DNA from: Macrostomum lignano
Taxonomy: Eukaryota
DNA length: 64,000 bases
Assembly (NCBI GenBank): GCA_002269645.1
Contig: NIVC01000408.1
Location: 1 to 64,000, forward strand
Reading direction: 5' to 3'
In this document: positions 16,335 to 63,078 of the stretch, piece after piece
Layout: every line of letters begins with the position of its first letter
Numbering within the stretch: the first letter of the stretch is position 1
Program-made: the position numbers and the translations under genes
Notes under the pieces: generated by a model
Database searches by the model: none
The model's input: the letters and a program-made list of their open reading frames with translations, nothing else
What the model was told of the DNA's origin: nothing

Positions 16335-18525
16335 ATCATGACTCACTGAAACAATTTGAGTCATGATCTGATCATGAGTCACTGATACAATTTGAGTCAT
16401 AACCTGATCATGAGTCACTGATACAATTTGAGTCATGACCTGATCATGAGTCACTGATACAATTTGAGTCATGACCTGATCATGAGTCACTGATACAATT
16501 TGAGTCATAACCTGATCATGAGTCACTGGTACAATTTGAGTCATGACTTGATCATGAGTCACTGATACAATTTGAGTCATGACTTGATCATGAGTCACTG
16601 ATACAATTTGAGTCATGACCTGATCATGAGTCACTGATACAATTTGAGTCATGACCTGATCATGAGTCACTGATACAATTTGAGCCATGACCTGATCATG
16701 AGTCACTGATACAATTTGAGTCATGACTTGATCATGAGTCACTGATACAATTTGAGTCATGACCTGATCATGAGTCACTGATACAATTTGAGTCATGACC
16801 TGATCATGAGTCACTGATACAATTTGAGCCATGACCTGATCATGAGTCACTGATACAATTTGAGTCATGACCTGATCATGAGTCACTGATACAATTTGAG
16901 TCATGACCTGATCATGAGTCACTGATACAATTTAAGCCATGACCTGATCATGAGTCACTGATACAATTTGAGTCACTGAAACAATTTGAGTCACTGAAAC
17001 AATTTGAGTCACTGATACAATTTGAGTCATAACCTGATCATGAGTCACTGATACAATTTGAGTCATTACCTGATCATGAGTCACTGATACAATTTGAGTC
17101 ATGACCTGATCATGAGTCACTGATACAATTTGAGCTATGACCTGATCATGAGTCACTGATACAATTTGAGTCATGACCTGATCATGAGTCACTGATACAA
17201 TTTGAGTCATAACCTGATCATGAGTCACTGGTACAATTTGAGTCATAACCTGATCATGAGTCACTGATACAATTTGAGTCATAACCTGATCATGAGTCAC
17301 TGATACAATTTGAGTCATGACCTGATCATGAGTCACTGATACAATTTGAGCCATGGCCTGATCATGAGTCACTTATACAATTTGAGTCATGACCTGATCA
17401 TGAGTCACTGATACAATTTGAGTCATGACCTGATCATGAGTCACTGATACAATTTGAGTCATAACCTGATCATGAGTCACTGGTACAATTTGAGTCATAA
17501 CCTGATCATGAGTCACTGATACAATTTGAGTCATGACTTGATCATGAGTCACTGATACAATTTGAGTCATGACCTGATCATGAGTCACTGATACAATTTG
17601 AGTCATGACCTGATCATGAGTCACTGATACAATTTGAGCCATGACCTGATCATGAGTCACTGATACAATTTGAGTCATGACTTGATCATGAGTCACTGAT
17701 ACAATTTGAGTCATGACCTGATCATGAGTCACTGATACAATTTGAGTCATGACCTGATCATGAGTCACTGATACAATTTGAGTCATGACCTGATCATGAG
17801 TCACTGATACAATTTGAGTCATGACCTGATCATGAGTCACTGATACAATTTGAGTCATGACCTGATCATGAGTCACTGATACAATTTGAGTCATGACCTG
17901 ATCATGAGTCACTGATACAATTTGAGTCATGACCTGATCATGAGTCACTGATACAATTTGAGTCATGACCTGATCATGAGTCACTGGTACAATTTGAGTC
18001 ATAACCTGATCATGAGTCACTGATACAATTTGAGTCATGACTTGATCATGAGTCACTGATACAATTTGAGTCATGACTTGATCATGAGTCACTGATACAA
18101 TTTGAGTCATGACCTGATCATGAGTCACTGATACAATTTGAGCCATGACCTGATCATGAGTCACTGATACAATTTGAGTCATGACTTGATCATGAGTCAC
18201 TGATACAATTTGAGTCATGACCTGATCATGAGTCACTGATACAATTTGAGTCATGACCTGATCATGAGTCACTGATACAATTTGAGCCATGACCTGATCA
18301 TGAGTCACTGATACAATTTGAGTCATGACCTGATCATGAGTCACTGATACAATTTGAGTCATGACCTGATCATGAGTCACTGATACAATTTGAGTCATGA
18401 CCTGATCATGAGTCACTGATACAATTTGAGTCATGACCTGATCATGAGTCACTGATACAATTTGAGTCATGACCTGATCATGAATCACTGATACAATTTG
18501 AGTCACGACTAATCATGAGTCACTG
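16335..18525. repeat. 36-bp satellite (TGAGTCACTGATACAATTTGAGTCATGACCTGATCA)n
   Basis: About 60 highly homogeneous copies, with two TGAGTCA per unit. Confidence 0.97.
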
Positions 18526-19537
18526 CAAGAATCAAAGACATGACCCGCAGCCTACATGACTCACAATGGATTAATACCAACCTAAAACATTGGTGGGTGC
18601 AGTTTGTGAGGCAAGTACCAGCAAAAGTTAATCCTCAACGGAGGGCTGCACAAGAAAGTAATTATTGGCGTTACCGGGCACGCTGGCAGCTGTCACAGGA
18701 GGTAGAGCAGTACAGATAGACTAACTGAGCGCAATTGAAAGCCAAGTTCGGGTTACGCCAGACGGACTAACAGATACAAAACGTAGTAAAAACGTATGAA
18801 AATACAGAAATGAAAGCGGACAAAAACTTTGCATGGCATTAAGATTGATCTGTCCATAGCGGATTCAGTTTTGCACTCAGCTTTCACATGTGGCGCCCAC
18901 ACACAGGAATTGCACCAAATGCACCGCGCATAGCGAAGTTCGTTCAACAAGCACGTATTTTATATCCTCTGGCTTATAAGGCTGACCTGTATGGGAGCTT
19001 CCTGGGGAGAAGAACGATTCTATTTTTAGAATATTTCACAAGGTAAGCAAATCCCCAAGAATAATCCGAGGGAGAAACAAAGAGGAAAACAAATTTGAAG
19101 AAGTTTAGAATATGTCAAACAAGAAGGAGACCGACTTAAAGTCGAATAAGTGAGGACAGAGATTGCAGTTATGGCCATGGACGTCTATGGTAAAAACCCA
19201 TTCAGCGCTACACTGTGCGTTCTCTAAAGAGCAAATAAAACGAAAGAGACAAATATGCGTTCCCTACAGGCCGCCAGATGATTTCTTAGAAAATCGCTGT
19301 CATCTAAATTATGGAGACTTTAGCTTACAAATCAAAGCAGATTTCAAACCCTTAATCTATTTAATTTGATATTTTCTAGTGGGTTTTCTTATGGTTTCTC
19401 CAAGAATAACTCTCTTCTAAATATGGTCTATGCCTGAACCCTATTTGATGCAATGTAACCAAAGTGGGTTTTTAAATTAATTTCCAAAAATTTAAACAAA
19501 TAAAATTGCAATAGAAAACAAGGAAAGTCGGCAAATC

Positions 19538-20485
19538 TCAGGAAAGACAGCCGGTTTCGAATGCTGAGGCTGCGGCGGCGTCTCCAGCGGCGGCAACGGT
19601 GGCGGCGGCGGTGGCGCAGGCGGCCTCGAGGCGCCAGTCGTGCTCGCTGAGCAGCTCCCGGCAGGCGTCCCGGTCGGCCAGGCCTAGCCGGAACAGCTGC
19701 TCGACCTTCAGGTAGCGGATGGCCGCCTCCGAGTCCCAGCGGTGCAGGCTGAGCGCCGCGTGGCTCTCCTCCTCCGTGACGCCGAACACCTGCTCGGTGA
19801 CGCTGCGGACCAAGTCCATGGGGGTCCGGCCGGGGCCGTAGGTCCTTTGCTCCGGCTTCAGCGGCGGCGTGGATTCCGCCCCGTCCACGGTGGACTCCGC
19901 CGGCGACGAGACCGACGGGAATAGCAGCAGCTGGCGTCGGCGCTTCGACCGGGGCGGTAGCACCCAGAAGAGGTCCTCGGAGATCTGGCGGCCGCCGCGC
20001 AGGATCGGGTGGATGCGCGGCCGACTGAGGGACGCGGCCTCTGCTGCGGATATTGGTGCTGACGTAGCTGGACTCATTGCTGCTGCTCTTCGCATTATCG
20101 GCGGCGGCGGCAGCGGCGGCGGAGATGGCGCCACCGGCGAGGTTGTCGGCGAAGAGGCTGCCGAGCGCAGCAGCGGCGAGTCGAACTCGGCTAGCGGGGC
20201 GCCAAACGCGGCCAAGGACGTGCCGAGGCTGGACAGGGAGGAGCCGAGGGAGAGGCGGCTGCTGCCGGCGCTGCGGGGCGACGCCGGCAATGACAGACAA
20301 CGTGCACCTCCATCGCTGCCACCGCCGCCGCCGCCGCTAGCGTCGCTGCTGCCTCTGACTAGTAGACAAGGAGTAGGTGAAGACGGCAAGGCAGCAGACG
20401 TCCCCGGACAGCGGCCGGCTGCTGTGCCAGATGATGCGGCTGCTTCAGCATCCGGGCTGGTCGGCTGTGAATCCCGATTGCCCAT
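19538..20485 (-). CDS. Ack/TNK2 C-terminus-like protein (Pro-rich, Mig6-homology segment, UBA region) with no kinase domain visible, 315 aa
   Basis: VFGVTEEESHAALSLHRWDSEAAIRYLKVEQLFRLGLADRDACRELLSEHDWRLEAA matches the ACK1 C-terminal UBA region. PRIHPILRGGRQISEDLFWVLPPR matches the Mig6-homology/EGFR-binding segment. An acceptor lies 19 nt before the ATG and a donor at 21008; no kinase exons were found up to 25124. Confidence 0.8.
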   Translation of the reverse strand: MGNRDSQPTSPDAEAAASSGTAAGRCPGTSAALPSSPTPCLLVRGSSDASGGGGGGSDGGARCLSLPASPRSAGSSRLSLGSSLSSLGTSLAAFGAPLAEFDSPLLRSAASSPTTSPVAPSPPPLPPPPIMRRAAAMSPATSAPISAAEAASLSRPRIHPILRGGRQISEDLFWVLPPRSKRRRQLLLFPSVSSPAESTVDGAESTPPLKPEQRTYGPGRTPMDLVRSVTEQVFGVTEEESHAALSLHRWDSEAAIRYLKVEQLFRLGLADRDACRELLSEHDWRLEAACATAAATVAAAGDAAAASAFETGCLS

Positions 20486-20614
20486 GCCGCTGCCCGGCTG
20501 CCGCCTGAGGGAAGATGAGATACGGCACGATCAGTTCCGGGTTCAGGTATCCTAGAAGTTTGTCGCGTGTACTTGACTATCCCCGCCTCTGCTTATCATT
20601 TTTGTTAGATTTTG

Positions 20615-20865
20615 TTAGAAATGTTTGAGTCAGAGGTCCTTGAGTCGGAGCTGTTTGAGTCAGAGTTCCTTGAGTCAGAACTGCTTGAGTCGGAACTGCT
20701 GGAGTTGGAACTGCTTGAGTCGGAAATGTTTAAGTCAGAGTTCCTTGAGTCGGAGCTGTTTGAGTCAGAGTTCCTTGAGTCGGAGTTCCTTGAGTCGGAA
20801 CTGTTTGAGTCGGAACTGATTGAGTCGGAACTGTTAGAGTCTGAAGTTTTTGAGTCGGAACTGTG
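20615..20865. repeat. Degenerate 15-bp repeat (TTGAGTCGGAACTGC-like)
   Basis: Lies in the intron upstream of the Ack-like exon. Confidence 0.8.
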
Positions 20866-22444
20866 TGCTTGCGGCCTTCAAACCAATTAGGACTAACACA
20901 GAATTTTATCGCACTCTGGTAATTCTTTAATTCACCATAAATATTGAGTGTGTCAACTACACGTCAATGCTATTTAATTCTTAATTACAGTATTGAGAAG
21001 TTACTCACCTAACGCAGCAGTTATCTCCTGCGATAGGATCTTAATCGCTCTATAACCTTTGTCAAAACAAATTTATTATCCCCATTTTGATGGGAATAAA
21101 TCGCGAAGGCCGGCACATTTCAGAATGAAACGATCTAGGCTGTTTCAGGGAGAATCCAAAATTTTAGTAGTAGTGGACTAGCACGCACGCCCCCCTTCGT
21201 CTGCCCTGTCTCCGTTTGACTTTGCTCCTTAGTCTGTCACGTTCTCCCTCTCTTTAAAATTAGGTGAATGCGGCACATAGGGGAGGGGCGGAGGGGGAGA
21301 GGGCGATCTGGACGGAAATCAGTTTAGACTGGATGAACTTTCCCGATGGTCACTCCCCCCTCAGTGTCTCTCAGCCAATGGCGGCCCCGGAGAGGTCCGT
21401 ATGCTGTACAGTCCTTTTGCCTGAATGGGCAAAAGCTGTTCAGGCCGAGACAGTAGACGTTCGCGTGTTTTTTTGTTGAAAAAAATGCTTCTTAGATGTA
21501 CACACACCCACGCCTCTCTCTCTCTCCGCCTCTGTCCCTCTCTCTAGCCTTTTTTGCTACCTATTTTGCTCCGCCGTTTGGCTTACCGCCATGTGACTCT
21601 ACTCTCTGACTCGGCAGCAATGGGGTGGCAAACACACTATTAGCTATTTTTTGGAGTTTTTCTCTTGTCATAAATGGCCGTGCGAGAGAAGTGCGAAACA
21701 GTAAAACAAAACTGTCAACAACGAAAAGGTGAATGTTTTCACACACACACACATGGGACAGACTTTGTTGATAATAAAACAGAGAAAAACAGGCTTTGTT
21801 TATCGCAAAAGCCCACTTTGACACTGATATTTATTGTAACTATAACTACTTCAGTAAATGTATATTGCTTACATAAGGAAGTGTACGGAAATTGCTAATC
21901 TGCATAATAATATATGCTTTTTGTGGAAATAAAATAAGTACAATACCATATATAGAAGTCTACAGACTAGATCCGGAGCCCATATGGTCCTGACAAAAAC
22001 TTTGTGAGTGAGTACATTAACATATAATATTCAACTAAATCAGCTGTAAATAGCGGTGACTCACACAGAAATTTAGAGTCTATATGCTATGAGAACTAAG
22101 GCTTAGTCTAAAACCCTTTTTCCCCAACCGTACATCACAGAAACAACAAGGGTCGGTTGCTGTCCCGCCTACGCACCCACGGGGATGGACAGAAGGCGGC
22201 GGCCTAACAAGCAGTCTGTCCCCCCATCTCGTCTCTGTAGCCTTGTCTGTCTTAGGCATGAATCAACAATGCTAATGCTTTATCCGTGCTGTACGCCAGG
22301 TTTTGCGTGGGAAGTTTAGCATGGAAAGAAGAATTGAGGGATATCAAGTGAAGGGAGATGCGTCATAATGAGTATAGGATTGGTGATTCAGAGCTTTATA
22401 AATACCTGATAGTTGATTAGTTTTTATCTGCAAAATGAGATTTC

Positions 22445-23290
22445 CATTGTGTCTCTAGAGCGTCCGATGTGTCTCTAGGGCGCTGAAATGGGTCTCTAGG
22501 GCGTCCAATGTGTCTTTAATGCGTCTCTAGGGCGCCGATATGTCTTGGGCGCCGATATATGTCTCTAGGGCGTCGATATCGAAATGTGTATCTAGGGCGT
22601 CCAATATGTCTCTAATGTGTTTCTAGGCCGCCGATATGTGCCTCTAGGACGTCAAATATATCCCTAGGGCGCCGATATGTGTCTCTAGGGCGTCAAATAT
22701 ATCTCTGGGGGCCCCAATATGTCTCTAAGGCGCCGATATGTGTCTTTTGTACGCCCAACTGTAGCTGGTCCCGTGTCCACTCTGTGGCTGGCGCCCCTCT
22801 GTTGCTGACACCCAACTGTTGTAATGTGTTTCTAGGGCATCCAATTGTGTCTCTAGGTCGTCAAATATATATCTGGGGTGACAATATGAATCTACGGCGC
22901 CGAAATGTGTCTCTTGTACGTCCAATGTGTCTCTAGGGCGCCCAATGTGTCTCTAGGGCATCCAATGTGTCTCTAAGGCGCCGAAATGTGTCTCTAGGGC
23001 GCCGATATATGTCTAGGGCGTCCAATGTATCTCTAGGGAGCCCAATGTGTCTCTAGAGCGCCGATATGTAACTCTAGGGCGTTGATATGTACCTCTAGGG
23101 CGTCTAGTATGTCTCTTTGGCACCCAATGTGTCTCTATGGCGCATAATGTGTCTCTAGGGCGCAGATATGTGTCTCTAGGACGTCGAAATGTGTCTCTAG
23201 GGCGTCCAACGTATCTCTTGGGCGCCCAATGTGTCTCTAGGGCGCCGATATGTGTCTCTAGGGCGCCTAAATGTGTCTACAGGGCACTTA
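22445..23290. repeat. Degenerate ~21-bp repeat (TGTGTCTCTAGGGCGCCGATA-like)
   Basis: Many diverged tandem copies. Confidence 0.85.
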
Positions 23291-23865
23291 ATGTAATGAC
23301 TAATGCGTCTCCATAGCGCTACACCCCAAAACGCCAATCTGCTCTTTAGTCGTTGTGCTAAGCTCATCAATCTCACCCTCTGCACAGCTATTTATAAATC
23401 CCATGTCACCTTGGAACTCAGCCAGAAATATTAGTCCCTCATTTTGATCCCAACTGGCGCAAAGTTTCCATCATTTTTGCATGCACAGATGCAGGAAACA
23501 GTGAATGAATGCTTGGCATGGCACCCCAAGCTCTCCCAAGCCCAGTTGGCGACCGGTTCATGCCCAATCCTGCATTCCTTTTGGCAAGCCTTCCCCTTAC
23601 CCTCCCACTTAGTGGCCTCCAATGTACTTTAAACTGACACTGAAATGGTAGAGCGTAATCAGCCCCAGTCATCGGGGTTTATCCAGTTGTCTGAGTCACG
23701 TGGCTTCATTCAGCCATGATTAATAGATTTTCTGCTAAGCCATCGAAAACAGGAAAACAGACAAATATGGCATTTGAATAACTGGGCTCTGAGTATAAAT
23801 ATTTGATTTATTGTCATTTATGTTTAGGGCAAAACAGTCCACGAATTTATAGCCTTCGGATCCCC

Positions 23866-24288
23866 AGATCTCAGATCCCCAGACCCATTAAGCCAGTCAT
23901 GACCTTCCCAGATCCCCAGATCAAGCCAGTCATGACCTTCCCAGATCCCCAGATCAAGCCAGTCATGACCTTCCCAGATCAGATCCCCAGATCAAGCCAG
24001 TCATGACCTTCCCAGATCCCCAGATCAAGCCAGTCATGACCTTCCCAGATCACCAGACTAAGCCAGTCATGACCTTCCCAGATCCCCAGATTAAGCCATT
24101 CATGACCTTCTCAGATCACCAGACTAAGCCAGTCATGACCTTCCCAGATCCCCAGATTAAGCCAGTCATGACCTTCCTAGATCACCAGACTAAGCCAGTC
24201 ATGACCTTCCCAGATCCCCAGATTAAGCCAGTCATGACCTTCCCAGATCACCAGACTAAGCCAGTCATGACCTTCCCAGATCACCAAT
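23866..24288. repeat. 33-bp minisatellite (CCAGATCCCCAGATCAAGCCAGTCATGACCTTC)n
   Basis: About 12 tandem copies. Confidence 0.93.
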
Positions 24289-25123
24289 AAAAGATCACCA
24301 ATAAAGGATCTTGCAATAAAAGCACATGTCATTTGTCAAAATGATAAAAAGTAAAGATTAATTAAAATTGATTATCAATTTAAAGTATATATATATATAT
24401 ATTTAAATAATTTGCAGTCTCATCAGGAACTAATTACATATATTATATAATATATATATGTATATTAGTTAAAAAAGCAGCATTAGACTCCTTTGAAATA
24501 AAAAATATTTAAGCTTCAAAATATCAAGTGAGTGAGTAACAACACAGTAATTGTATTGCTTTTTAGTTTGATTGTGTGAACTACTATGAGTAGTGGCAGT
24601 GTCTTGAGTTTTACACGACAGTTATACAGCAGACGAACAATAACAAAAAATATCTTTTAAGAGTCGTGGATTGCAAAAAACCTTTCAAATTCGATTTACA
24701 AAAAGGATTTAAAATTGTAGTCAAAGATATTTATAAATAATTAACATTTAAAAGAATTAGTAATAATAACCGAGACTGGCATTAGCTCGGGAAGAGTATA
24801 TATAGTCACACACTACTGCGTCGTCAATAGTATTGATTTTTAGTATATGAATCGATAGATATTTATAAACAATAATAGTAAATAACAGTTGTGCACTTGT
24901 GCATTATTAAAAAGATAGATAGTTAAAGACACGACAGCCAAAACTAAATAAAAATGAGATATGTTAGCTTGATTTGATAAAACAGAACAGTTTGTTTAAA
25001 CAAATAATAAGTAATCGGCAGGAGCAGCTATAGTTTAGTTATTCAGAATAAACACCTCGACACCTAAGTAGTCAGTCTTGCATGGCGCTACTAATTCAGA
25101 ACACGACGCCGGCAAAGGCGCAA

Positions 25124-57379
<32,256 letters not shown>

Positions 57380-59668: not shown

Positions 59669-63078
<3,410 letters not shown>

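What the first reader, a model, noticed from the sequence alone, without database searches (positions are those of the whole stretch)
19538..21010. Kinase-less Ack derivative resembling an invertebrate Mig6-like EGFR inhibitor
Seen: a 315-aa ORF with an MGNRDS start (MGxxxS), PPPLPPPP, a Mig6-homology segment (19949-20020) and an Ack-type UBA region (~19610-19822). Only a short upstream exon (donor 21008) and repeats lie between it and the previous gene; no kinase, SH3 or CRIB exons were found. The ACK1/Mig6 phospho-tyrosine pair (HYY) is replaced by LFW. Established: vertebrate Mig6/ERRFI1 is a kinase-less Ack relative that blocks the EGFR kinase through this segment. Inference: an independently evolved, myristoylated, non-phosphorylatable EGFR/RTK antagonist or ubiquitin-dependent sorting adaptor.
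Basis: partly seen in the sequence, partly recalled or inferred. Interest (0 to 1): 0.7.

Follow-up and report, generated by a model that had tools for sequence, protein, structure and literature searches.

The report
Kinase-less Ack-derived adaptor gene in a flatworm
This is a real gene of the flatworm Macrostomum lignano that keeps only the tail of the Ack tyrosine kinase (a Mig6-like kinase-binding hairpin plus a ubiquitin-binding domain) behind a lipid-anchor signal, so it resembles the vertebrate EGFR inhibitor Mig6 but arose separately, and its function is untested.

Summary
The window is Macrostomum lignano (Mlig_3_7). ORF 19538-20485 (-) encodes 315 aa starting MGNRDS. It has PPPLPPPP (aa 122-129), a segment homologous to the Ack/Mig6 "segment 2" hairpin (aa 154-182; profile E=6e-7 against the six-frame window; the same profile hits ERRFI1 in PDB 4ZJV at 5e-10), and an Ack/TNK1-type UBA (aa 222-292; E=1.5e-12 to human ACK1 UBA; predicted fold TM 0.88 to TNK1 UBA). 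Mig6 H393/Y394/Y395 align to L172/F173/W174.

No kinase, SH3, SAM or CRIB sequence occurs anywhere in the 64 kb. An unrelated LRR-Roc-COR-TIR gene lies upstream on the same strand, and there are no assembly gaps.

The gene is not a lone relic. M. lignano has two further diverged paralogue groups (299 and 296 aa, three copies each). All have an intronless CDS, start MGN[RK]xS, and carry the hairpin and UBA. dS exceeds 1, with dN/dS of 0.18 (hairpin) and 0.38 (UBA). Kinase-less single-exon counterparts exist in a trematode and a cestode.

"Kinase-less Ack derivative" is therefore well supported. "EGFR antagonist" is only an inference: Mig6 segment 1 is absent, and only this paralogue lacks the tyrosine. 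RNA evidence for the 5' end and the status of a full-length Ack in M. lignano remain open.

The parts
19538..20485 (-). Complete CDS, 315 aa plus stop (P0001). It sits in a single exon.
   Evidence: ORF list and translation. An identical 315-aa gene model is present on NIVC01001610.1 in GCA_002269645.1. An in-frame TGA lies at 20531-20533 upstream of the ATG (read from the sequence).
20465..20485 (-). N-terminal MGNRDSQ, which fits the N-myristoylation consensus G-{EDRKHPFYW}-x(2)-[STAGCN]-{P}.
   Evidence: Direct reading of the sequence. The motif is conserved as MGNRESS (P0002) and MGNKLSS (P0044). Codons differ synonymously (GGC/GGC/GGA, AAT/AAC/AAC, TCA/TCT/TCC) while the next ~150 aa are unalignable.
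20285..20302 (-). R62-C-L-S-L-P67, a possible 14-3-3 mode-1-like site (R-x-x-S-x-P). Tentative.
   Evidence: It aligns with PRCLSLP, CCVSLP and FC[KR]SLP in Ack C-termini of other animals in alignment A2. No statistical test was run.
20099..20122 (-). PPPLPPPP (aa 122-129), the counterpart of the conserved Ack PP[LIV]PPRD(Y) proline motif.
   Evidence: Column alignment in A2. AF2 pLDDT is about 79 here, against less than 50 in the flanks.
19940..20026 (-). Ack/Mig6 'segment 2' hairpin, aa 154-182 (SRPRIHPILRGGRQISEDLFWVLPPRSKR). L172/F173/W174 stand in place of Mig6 H393/Y394/Y395.
   Evidence: HMM E=6e-7, the only hit in the six-frame window. The profile hits 4ZJV chain C (ERRFI1) at 5e-10. 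hhalign probability 96.5%. AF2 predicts a beta-hairpin with pLDDT 85-94. dN/dS is 0.18 against paralogue P0002.
19610..19822 (-). Ack/TNK1-type UBA domain, aa 222-292.
   Evidence: PDB 8tha E=1.5e-12 and 7tcy 5e-6. Pfam UBA_4 E=1.2e-6. AF2 pLDDT 94-97. Foldseek best match is the TNK1 UBA 7tcy_A, TMt 0.88, rmsd 1.3 A. 30 of 35 consensus positions are kept. GC3 is 0.99.
20505..21008 (-). Putative 5'-UTR intron (GTGAGT donor at 21008, acceptor AG ending at 20505). It contains a 15/45-bp minisatellite at 20622-20863. Alternatively it is an outron removed by SL trans-splicing at the same acceptor.
   Evidence: These are the only GTRAG donor and the only YYYNCAG acceptor in 800 nt. TRF shows the minisatellite. 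Paralogue L002 has the same layout: GGTGAGT about 440 nt upstream and ...ctcgcag 16 nt before the ATG. No RNA data were available.
21009..21200 (-). Putative non-coding leader exon. Its 5' limit is unknown. It carries an in-frame TAA (21041-21043) and a short uORF.
   Evidence: Translation of the spliced leader shows stops in the CDS frame before the ATG at 20485. This part is inferred, not shown.
19360..19365 (-). ATTAAA, a candidate poly(A) signal 173 nt after the stop codon.
   Evidence: Pattern scan.

Best explanation
The locus is a bona fide Macrostomum lignano gene whose whole CDS sits in one exon. It encodes a non-catalytic descendant of the Ack (TNK2/ACK1) family that retains only the C-terminal regulatory module.

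The protein has five parts in order:
- an N-terminal myristoylation signal (MGNRDS);
- about 120 residues of disordered Ser/Ala/Pro-rich linker;
- the Ack proline motif;
- the Ack/Mig6 'segment 2' beta-hairpin;
- the Ack/TNK1-type UBA domain.

It is one of at least three old paralogue groups in this species (seven gene copies in the assembly). It probably belongs to a flatworm-wide set of kinase-less Ack-tail genes.

Proposed mechanism (inferred): Gly2 is myristoylated, which tethers the protein weakly to membranes. The hairpin occupies the substrate-binding cleft of a tyrosine-kinase domain, either an EGFR-family receptor or Ack itself. Because Phe173 replaces the acceptor tyrosine, it would act as a pseudosubstrate that cannot be phosphorylated. 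The UBA binds ubiquitin on the receptor or on sorting machinery. The protein would then work as a membrane-proximal adaptor or decoy that damps or reroutes RTK/Ack signalling. This makes it a functional analogue of vertebrate Mig6 and of the non-catalytic half of ACK1, not an orthologue.

Shown here: gene integrity, domain homology, absence of kinase exons, paralogue conservation and purifying selection. Inferred: myristoylation, the binding partners and the direction of the effect.

The confidence of 0.85 refers to 'a real, kinase-less, Ack-derived gene with this architecture'. My confidence that it is specifically an EGFR/RTK antagonist is about 0.3.
For: Identity and integrity:
- The window is M. 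lignano Mlig_3_7, and the 315-aa model is present in that assembly's gene set.
- The GenBank annotation of this assembly was built from RNA-seq/transcriptome models with TransDecoder ORFs (PMC5730564).
- There are no gaps in the window.

Homology:
- UBA: E=1.5e-12 to ACK1, and a fold match to the TNK1 UBA with TM 0.88.
- Hairpin: profile E=6e-7, linked to ERRFI1 segment 2 in 4ZJV at 5e-10, hhalign 96.5%.
- Nearly all listed hits of the 155 in the exhaustive search match over the Ack-type UBA. Most also carry the hairpin motif. Those I could name are Ack/TNK2 or TNK1.

Kinase-less status:
- tblastn with 21 full-length Acks finds no kinase, SH3 or SAM sequence in the 64 kb.
- The next upstream gene on the same strand is an unrelated LRR-Roc-COR-TIR protein.
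- There is an in-frame stop upstream of the ATG, both in the genome and in the only plausible spliced leader.

Conservation:
- Paralogues P0002 (Mlig008990g1-3) and P0044 (Mlig027856g1/g2, Mlig007452g1) have the same length, the same start (MGN[RK]xS), the hairpin and the UBA. The CDS is intronless, and neither has a same-strand kinase match in its 10-kb flanks.
- Between P0001 and P0002, dS exceeds 1, with dN/dS 0.18 (hairpin) and 0.38 (UBA).
- P0001 keeps 30 of 35 consensus UBA positions, more than its paralogues.
- GC3 is 0.92-0.99 in the conserved blocks.
- Single-exon kinase-less counterparts occur in Calicophoron and Mesocestoides. The five flatworm proteins group together in an NJ tree: 85% for the M. 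lignano trio, 52% for all five.

Mechanistic precedent from the literature:
- Mig6 segment 2 occupies the EGFR substrate site.
- The ACK1 Mig6-homology region binds the EGFR kinase domain and is proposed to autoinhibit Ack.
- The ACK1 UBA binds ubiquitin and p62 and affects EGFR trafficking (PMC10047419; PMC8306081).
Against: - No RNA reads, long reads or SL-read maps were available, so the 5' structure and expression of this particular copy rest on the annotation's provenance and on conservation.
- Mig6 segment 1 (M346/F352/Y358) is not detectable. PF11555 gives no hit, although bona fide invertebrate Acks also miss it.
- Per the literature, unphosphorylated segment 2 binds EGFR very weakly and Y394/Y395 phosphorylation is critical. 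Here the pair is F-W.
- All three M. lignano groups also changed the conserved T-H to [ED/KD]-[LIF], so the hairpin's target may have shifted.
- A myristoyl group alone, with no nearby Cys or basic cluster, gives only weak membrane affinity.
- The first ~60 codons and codons 106-150 have low GC3 (0.45-0.65), so they are weakly constrained.
- I could not determine whether M. lignano has a full-length Ack.
- The window copy has no near-identical homeologue in the protein collection, unlike its paralogues.
Confidence: 0.85

Rival explanations
1. Trans-acting regulator of Ack rather than of EGFR. The free hairpin-plus-UBA module binds the kinase domain of full-length flatworm Ack, as the Mig6-homology region is proposed to do in cis in ACK1. 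Alternatively it competes with Ack for ubiquitinated cargo or p62-like partners. Either way it tunes Ack signalling.
For: - The ACK1 Mig6-homology region is proposed to autoinhibit its own kinase domain, with segment 2 modelled in the Ack substrate site (PMC10047419).
- The segment here resembles invertebrate Ack far more than it resembles Mig6.
- Schistosoma mansoni, another flatworm, has two Ack-family kinases (PMC3135232).
Against: - In ACK1 the key autoinhibitory residue cited (F821) lies in segment 1, which is absent here.
- The presence and architecture of Ack in M. lignano were not established.
- There are no binding data.
Confidence: 0.25
2. Product of gene fission. In the flatworm ancestor the Ack gene split, or a 5'-truncated retrocopy of its 3' half was made. 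The tail module now works as a separate subunit with essentially ancestral Ack-tail functions (ubiquitin- and receptor-linked endocytic sorting). It is not a new inhibitor.
For: - The CDS is intronless in all three M. lignano groups, in Calicophoron and in Mesocestoides.
- Among proteins whose names I could look up, every flatworm protein carrying this UBA is kinase-less. Full-length Acks with hairpin and UBA occur in molluscs, nemerteans, echinoderms, a hemichordate, amphioxus and a crustacean.
- The five flatworm proteins cluster weakly (52%).
Against: - The 52% bootstrap on 94 columns may reflect long-branch attraction.
- I could not examine whether flatworm Ack kinases lack the tail.
- The myristoylation start is new and is not universal. 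It is absent in Mesocestoides.
Confidence: 0.3
3. The ORF is only the 3'-terminal exon of a conventional full-length Ack gene whose kinase exons lie outside the window, or it is a decaying gene fragment.
For: - A good acceptor sits 19 nt upstream of the ATG, and the reading frame is open across it for 6 codons.
- GC-rich sequence produces long ORFs by chance. Overlapping ORFs of 290 and 228 aa exist in other frames.
Against: - There are no kinase, SH3 or SAM exons in the 43.5 kb upstream, and an unrelated gene on the same strand intervenes.
- The only donor upstream leads from a leader with an in-frame stop.
- The transcript-based annotation calls a 315-aa CDS.
- Two other paralogue groups start at the same MGN[RK]xS methionine with synonymous codon differences.
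- The blocks are under purifying selection, and the UBA is the best preserved of the flatworm set.
Confidence: 0.04

Closest known systems
ACK1/TNK2-family non-receptor tyrosine kinases (C-terminal Mig6-homology region plus UBA), especially lophotrochozoan and deuterostome invertebrate Acks
   Same: It has the same three C-terminal elements in the same order: the PPxPP(RDY) motif, the I-x-P-[IV]-x-x-[DNG]-G-x-Q-x-S...[YF][FWY]-[LV]-[LI]-P hairpin, and a five-helix UBA (52% identity to the Argonauta Ack UBA by tblastn). By sequence this is the parent family.
   Different: It has no SAM, kinase, SH3 or CRIB/GTPase-binding domain. It has gained an N-terminal myristoylation consensus. The CDS is intronless. 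The conserved T-H-Y triad has changed to D-L-F.
Vertebrate Mig6 / ERRFI1 (Gene 33, RALT)
   Same: Both are kinase-less relatives of the Ack C-terminus, and both share the segment-2 core that sits in the EGFR substrate cleft in PDB 4ZJV (profile E=5e-10). Both are largely disordered adaptor-type proteins.
   Different: Mig6 has segment 1, which is not detectable here. Mig6 also has a CRIB domain, and no CRIB is detected here. Mig6 has the phosphorylatable Y394/Y395 pair and no UBA. It is described as restricted to vertebrates (PMC8306081). The flatworm protein keeps the UBA, has F-W at the tyrosine pair, is myristoylation-competent, and gives no PF11555 hit. It is an analogue by parallel truncation, not an orthologue.
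M. lignano paralogues BOX15_Mlig008990g1-3 (PAA62148.1 etc.) and Mlig027856g1/g2 and Mlig007452g1 (PAA88438.1 etc.), annotated 'hypothetical protein' or 'UBA domain-containing protein'
   Same: They have the same architecture, the same MGN[RK]xS start, a similar length (296-299 aa) and an intronless CDS. P0002 also has a similar 5' layout.
   Different: Identity is only 32-39% overall, and the N-terminal halves are unalignable. The paralogues retain the first tyrosine (IYW, FYW) where the window gene has LFW. Each paralogue group has three near-identical copies, while the window gene has one.
Kinase-less Ack-tail proteins of parasitic flatworms (Calicophoron daubneyi CAL8078387.1, 515 aa; Mesocestoides corti VDD84340.1 and A0A5K3FX40, 471/494 aa, auto-named 'Activated cdc42 kinase 1')
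   Same: They are single-exon genes with PPPPPR, hairpin and UBA. No kinase exon lies in the flanks available (10 kb and 6 kb upstream). They group with the M. lignano genes at 52% bootstrap.
   Different: They are longer and keep the canonical T-H-Y-W. Only the Calicophoron protein starts with an MG...S motif. They are very divergent (E about 1e-4 to the window protein).

Membership tests
Ack (TNK2/ACK1/TNK1) non-receptor tyrosine kinase family | Tyrosine kinase catalytic domain (PF07714) | tested here: not met
   Pfam finds no kinase domain in the protein. tblastn of 21 full-length Acks finds none in the 64-kb window on either strand. The positive control P0003 gives PF07714 at E=8e-85.
Ack (TNK2/ACK1/TNK1) non-receptor tyrosine kinase family | N-terminal SAM, SH3 C-terminal to the kinase, and CRIB/GTPase-binding domain | tested here: not met
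   No PF22931, SH3 or PF09027 hit in the protein. No tblastn match to those parts of Ack in the window.
Ack (TNK2/ACK1/TNK1) non-receptor tyrosine kinase family | C-terminal Mig6-homology hairpin (segment 2 core) | tested here: met
   HMM E=6e-7. hhalign probability 96.5%.
Ack (TNK2/ACK1/TNK1) non-receptor tyrosine kinase family | C-terminal Ack/TNK1-type UBA | tested here: met
   PDB 8tha E=1.5e-12. Foldseek 7tcy_A TMt 0.88. UBA_4 scores above Pfam's cut-off.
Mig6 / ERRFI1 (Pfam PF11555 Inhibitor_Mig-6) | Match to the family model PF11555 | tested here: not met
   No hit at E<=10. The model also misses genuine invertebrate Acks and hits only the vertebrate ACK1 proteins in the list, so this test is weak.
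Mig6 / ERRFI1 (Pfam PF11555 Inhibitor_Mig-6) | Segment 1 (EGFR C-lobe docking; M346, F352, Y358) | tested here: not met
   Nothing upstream of aa 154 aligns to any conserved element except the PPxPP motif. There is no PF11555 hit. No direct alignment to the Mig6 segment 1 sequence was run.
Mig6 / ERRFI1 (Pfam PF11555 Inhibitor_Mig-6) | Segment 2 core with the phosphorylatable tyrosine pair (Y394/Y395) | tested here: inconclusive
   The core is present, but the pair is F173/W174. The paralogues have Y-W.
Mig6 / ERRFI1 (Pfam PF11555 Inhibitor_Mig-6) | Binding to and inhibition of EGFR-family kinase domains | not testable with these tools
   This needs binding and kinase assays or complex modelling with M. 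lignano EGFRs.
UBA domain proteins (ubiquitin binding) | Helical UBA fold with the conserved alpha-3 aromatic residue and the loop G-[VF] motif | tested here: met
   AF2 pLDDT 94-97. The fold matches the TNK1 UBA. Y257 in RYLKVEQ and F-G-V at the HGV/MGF position are read from the alignment and compared with the description in PMC10047419. Actual ubiquitin binding was not tested.
N-myristoylated proteins | Met-Gly start fitting G-{EDRKHPFYW}-x(2)-[STAGCN]-{P} | tested here: met
   The sequence M-G-N-R-D-S-Q fits the pattern. It is conserved in all three M. lignano paralogue groups. The pattern is applied from my knowledge of PROSITE PS00008. The modification itself cannot be tested here.

The most novel reading that the evidence does not exclude
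Flatworms independently evolved a Mig6-like class of regulators by freeing the Ack tail from its kinase, through fission or a 5'-truncated retrocopy in the flatworm ancestor. In Macrostomum the module gained a myristoyl anchor and expanded into three paralogue groups. One group (this gene) has turned the phospho-acceptor hairpin into a constitutive pseudosubstrate (Y to F) that cannot be phosphorylated and is coupled to a UBA. It would then be a membrane-tethered, ubiquitin-reading inhibitor of EGFR and/or Ack kinases. That would be a convergent solution to RTK feedback control in an animal whose stem-cell and regeneration biology depends on EGFR signalling.
Probability: 0.25. Interest if true: 0.75.

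Novelty: new variant of a known kind. Interest (0 to 1): 0.55.

Why it matters
Recent reviews state that Mig6 exists only in vertebrates (PMC8306081). They also state that no protein other than Ack1 has homology to Mig6, and that vertebrate Acks are the only tyrosine kinases with a UBA (PMC10047419).

The searches here show two things:
- The hairpin-plus-UBA tail is ancestral to bilaterian Acks. It is present in molluscs, nemerteans, echinoderms, a hemichordate, amphioxus and a crustacean.
- Flatworms carry stand-alone, kinase-less versions of that tail that are under purifying selection and are so far uncharacterised.

If these proteins regulate EGFR or Ack signalling, they would be a second, independent invention of a Mig6-type regulator. 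They would also be a natural experiment on what the Ack tail does without its kinase. M. lignano is a transgenic, RNAi-amenable regeneration model, so the question can be tested directly. If they do not regulate these kinases, the gene is still a tidy case of domain-module release from a kinase.

Tried and rejected
- **Word-indexed protein search, full ORF:** it returned only the query itself, because low-complexity words swamped the 8000 candidates.
- **Same search, 138-aa C-terminal segment:** it found nothing, not even the query. That search was wasted. The exhaustive HMMER search was what found the paralogues.
- **Six-frame Pfam scan by DNA reference:** I replaced it with tblastn of 21 full-length Acks in a script.
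- **PDB search with the hairpin region alone as a single sequence:** only chance hits. The profile version worked.
- **Looking for a full-length M. lignano Ack:** I queried with the compositionally similar full-length Ack P0049. No M. lignano protein was among the best 120 hits, and P0049's closest named relatives are nemertean. Its contig has no M. lignano spliced leader. The question stays open.
- **Expression data:** the paralogue gene ids do not occur in any paper text or in the two held supplements of PMC5816591.
- **SL trans-splicing at 20505:** considered. The acceptor (CCTCAG) only partly fits the reported [T/C]TNCAG motif. I cannot decide this without reads.
- **Terminal exon of a full-length Ack, pseudogene fragment, or chance GC-rich ORF:** considered and rejected (see rival explanations).


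Full report
**Source and setting.** The 315-aa protein is an existing gene model on contig NIVC01001610.1 (260 kb) of assembly GCA_002269645.1. Several papers identify this assembly as Macrostomum lignano Mlig_3_7. The window has no N runs and is full of minisatellites. The GenBank annotation of this assembly was produced from genome-guided transcript assemblies with TransDecoder ORFs (PMC5730564). An annotated CDS therefore implies at least low-level RNA support. I could not inspect the reads myself.

**Check of the observation.** The ORF 19538..20485 (-) encodes 315 aa beginning MGNRDS.
- An in-frame TGA lies 16 codons upstream (20531-20533).
- A strong acceptor (tctcatcttccctcag|G) ends at 20505, 19 nt before the ATG.
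- Joining 21009 to 20504 gives a leader with an in-frame TAA and a short uORF, so the ATG at 20485 is the first usable in-frame start in that model.
- M. lignano trans-splices roughly 30-39% of its genes to a 35-nt leader (PMC5730564 and PMC8629364). The same acceptor could therefore be a trans-splice site. Either way the coding start is unchanged.

**The C-terminal domain.** phmmer against PDB sequences matches aa 222-290 to the human ACK1 UBA (8tha, E=1.5e-12) and to the TNK1 UBA (7tcy, E=5e-6). Pfam UBA_4 scores above its gathering threshold. An AlphaFold2 model built on a 30-sequence alignment gives pLDDT 94-97 for aa 222-300. Foldseek's best PDB matches are all TNK1 UBA structures (7tcy_A: TMt 0.88, rmsd 1.3 A).

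**The Mig6-like segment.** Pfam's Inhibitor_Mig-6 model does not hit the protein. It also misses genuine invertebrate Acks and appears only on the vertebrate ACK1 proteins, so that negative result says little. I searched the six-frame translation of the entire window with filters off. The only hit is 19940-20026 (-), E=6e-7; everything else has E>=2.9. A 24-sequence profile of the same segment finds ERRFI1 chain C of PDB 4ZJV (...[26 protein letters not shown]) at E=5e-10. It aligns to P0001 aa 154-182 with 96.5% hhalign probability. The homology claim is therefore sound. Specifically, this is the core of Mig6 segment 2, with Mig6 H393/Y394/Y395 corresponding to L172/F173/W174. The AF2 model predicts a beta-hairpin here with pLDDT 85-94. 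The PPPLPPPP run aligns with the conserved Ack PP[LIV]PPRD(Y) motif.

**Is it really kinase-less?**
- tblastn of 21 full-length Acks (906-1582 aa) against the whole window gives hits only to the hairpin and the UBA. Most of these queries contain the kinase catalytic motif.
- The 43.5 kb upstream on the coding strand contains an annotated 3594-aa gene ending near 26311. Its exons encode LRR, Roc, COR-A, COR-B and two TIR domains. It is unrelated to Ack.
- The strongest argument comes from paralogues. The exhaustive HMMER search found P0002 (299 aa, E=9e-34) and P0044 (296 aa), both from other contigs of the same assembly.
- Each of these represents three near-identical annotated genes: BOX15_Mlig008990g1-3, and Mlig027856g1/g2 with Mlig007452g1.
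- Both have an intronless CDS, begin MGNRESS and MGNKLSS, carry the hairpin (SEDIYWVLPPR, TKDFYWVLPER) and the UBA, and have in-frame stops upstream of the ATG.
- Neither has a same-strand kinase-domain match in its 10-kb flanks. L013 gave one marginal opposite-strand match about 8 kb downstream (E=0.001).
- The first six codons are conserved through synonymous differences, while the following ~150 residues cannot be aligned. This argues that this methionine is the start and that the N-terminal motif is selected.

**Selection.** Between P0001 and P0002, synonymous sites are saturated (dS 1.0-1.6). dN/dS is 0.18 for the hairpin and 0.38 for the UBA. The linker is about 0.9, and the N-terminal half is not meaningfully alignable. 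P0001 retains 30 of 35 strongly conserved UBA positions, more than either paralogue. GC3 is 0.92-0.99 in the conserved blocks, against 0.71-0.83 in neighbouring coding exons. The window copy shows no sign of decay. Its first ~60 codons and codons 106-150 have low GC3 and look weakly constrained.

**Wider distribution.**
- Nearly all listed hits of the 155 match over the Ack-type UBA, and most also carry the hairpin motif.
- The full-length kinases whose names I looked up come from cephalopod, bivalve and gastropod molluscs, nemerteans, a bryozoan, echinoderms, a hemichordate, amphioxus, an amphipod and vertebrates. The hairpin-plus-UBA tail is therefore ancestral to bilaterian Ack. This is broader than the reviews suggest (PMC10047419).
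- Two parasitic flatworm proteins are also single-exon, with PPPPPR, hairpin (SDTHYW) and UBA, and no kinase sequence in the available flanks: Calicophoron daubneyi (515 aa, starts MGIHHS) and Mesocestoides corti (471/494 aa).
- An NJ tree on 94 columns groups the M. lignano trio at 85%, P0001 with P0002 at 96%, and all five flatworm kinase-less proteins at only 52%. A single flatworm origin is suggested but not demonstrated.
- Schistosoma mansoni has two Ack-family kinases and four EGFRs (PMC3135232), so the likely partners exist in the phylum.
- I could not establish whether M. lignano has a full-length Ack, or whether flatworm Acks keep the tail.

**Mechanism.** What is known from vertebrates (PMC8306081; PMC10047419):
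- Mig6 segment 1 docks on the EGFR C-lobe, and segment 2 occupies the substrate site.
- Phosphorylation of Y394/Y395 is critical, and unphosphorylated segment 2 binds very weakly.
- The ACK1 Mig6-homology region binds the EGFR kinase domain and is proposed to autoinhibit Ack.
- The ACK1 UBA binds ubiquitin and p62 and influences EGFR trafficking.

By homology, the flatworm protein most plausibly acts as a non-catalytic adaptor or decoy. Its hairpin would engage a tyrosine-kinase substrate cleft and its UBA would read ubiquitin, with weak membrane tethering through a myristoyl group. Phe at the acceptor position would make this paralogue a pseudosubstrate that cannot be phosphorylated. Several points weigh against a simple Mig6-like reading. 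Segment 1 is absent. The T-H-Y triad has changed in all three M. lignano groups. The other two groups keep the tyrosine. These points leave Ack itself as an equally reasonable target. I put about 0.85 on 'real kinase-less Ack-derived gene with this architecture'. I put about 0.3 on 'EGFR/RTK antagonist' specifically.

**Comparison with known families.** The protein fails the defining tests for the Ack kinase family, because it has no kinase, SAM, SH3 or CRIB. It also fails the tests for Mig6: no segment 1, no CRIB, no PF11555 hit, and it has a UBA instead. It is best described as an Ack-tail derivative that parallels Mig6. The genes are deposited only as 'hypothetical protein' or 'UBA domain-containing protein', and I found no paper that discusses them.

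**Verdict.** The structural interpretation is supported and is strengthened by the paralogues. The functional interpretation is a reasonable but untested hypothesis, and in one respect ('non-phosphorylatable') it applies only to this copy. Novelty: a new variant of a known kind. Interest: moderate (0.55).

Noticed in passing
window 26311-40600 (-): The upstream gene on the same strand is a very large (3594 aa) ROCO-type protein. Its exons encode LRRs, Roc GTPase, COR-A, COR-B and two TIR domains (Pfam). Several exons are interrupted or flanked by coding-frame minisatellites, for example the PTPSNTIQHH repeats at 29.9-31.8 kb and the NNPNPTTPMQQPQS repeats at 36.7-38.5 kb. An LRR-Roc-COR-TIR combination in a flatworm may merit its own look.
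   Followed up: partly
window 16335-18525, 20622-20863, 22443-23294, 23887-24322, 25398-26476 and many others: There is an extreme density of minisatellites (units of 15, 20, 28, 33 and 36 bp; up to 43 copies at 96% identity). They generate long spurious ORFs in several frames. In the window and in L013, the stretch just upstream of the acceptor nearest the start codon, which may be a 5'-UTR intron, contains a minisatellite.
   Followed up: partly
P0001 aa 61-68 (window 20282-20305), alignment A2: The motif ARCLSLPAS aligns with PRCLSLPLS, CCVSLPIK, FCKSLPDV and FCRSLPGG in Ack C-termini of other animals. It is an R-x-x-S-x-P, 14-3-3-like site. Mig6 has a mapped 14-3-3-binding domain (PMC8306081), and from memory TNK1 is also a 14-3-3 client. 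No statistical test was run.
   Followed up: no
loci L003-L012 (Logan/ENA contigs, organism unknown): Two further ORFs, of 416 aa (P0010) and 358 aa (P0005), carry PPxPPRDY, hairpin (NTHYWLLP) and UBA but no kinase. They recur on 1.9-2.7 kb contigs from many sequencing runs, with in-frame stops upstream of the ATG. For P0010, most contigs have an intron-like acceptor (cgacag) directly before the ATG, while one contig (L004) has a different, apparently spliced 5' end. Related ORFs (P0029, P0036) start within an SH3 domain. These could be internal-promoter isoforms or separate kinase-less genes in another invertebrate lineage.
   Followed up: partly
P0001 codons 1-60 and 106-150 versus 61-105 and 151-295: GC3 alternates sharply along the CDS: about 0.45-0.65 against 0.8-1.0. 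Paralogue P0002 is uniformly high (about 0.8-0.97), and P0044 is uniformly moderate (about 0.4-0.77). The cause is unknown. Candidates are mosaic origin, local constraint, or biased gene conversion.
   Followed up: no
window 60230-62019 (+): Ankyrin-repeat ORFs (Pfam Ank) look like exons of another multi-exon gene on the plus strand. From the sequence they may belong to a TRP-channel-like protein. This was not examined further.
   Followed up: no
hairpin motif across the three M. lignano paralogue groups: All three groups changed the near-invariant S-x-T-H-Y-[FWY]-L-[LI]-P to [ST]-[EK]-D-[LIF]-[FY]-W-V-L-P. That is an acidic residue at the Thr position and Trp at the second aromatic. They also changed Q-D-G to [RQ]-[GN]-G. 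This looks like a lineage-specific re-tuning of the hairpin, not random drift.
   Followed up: partly
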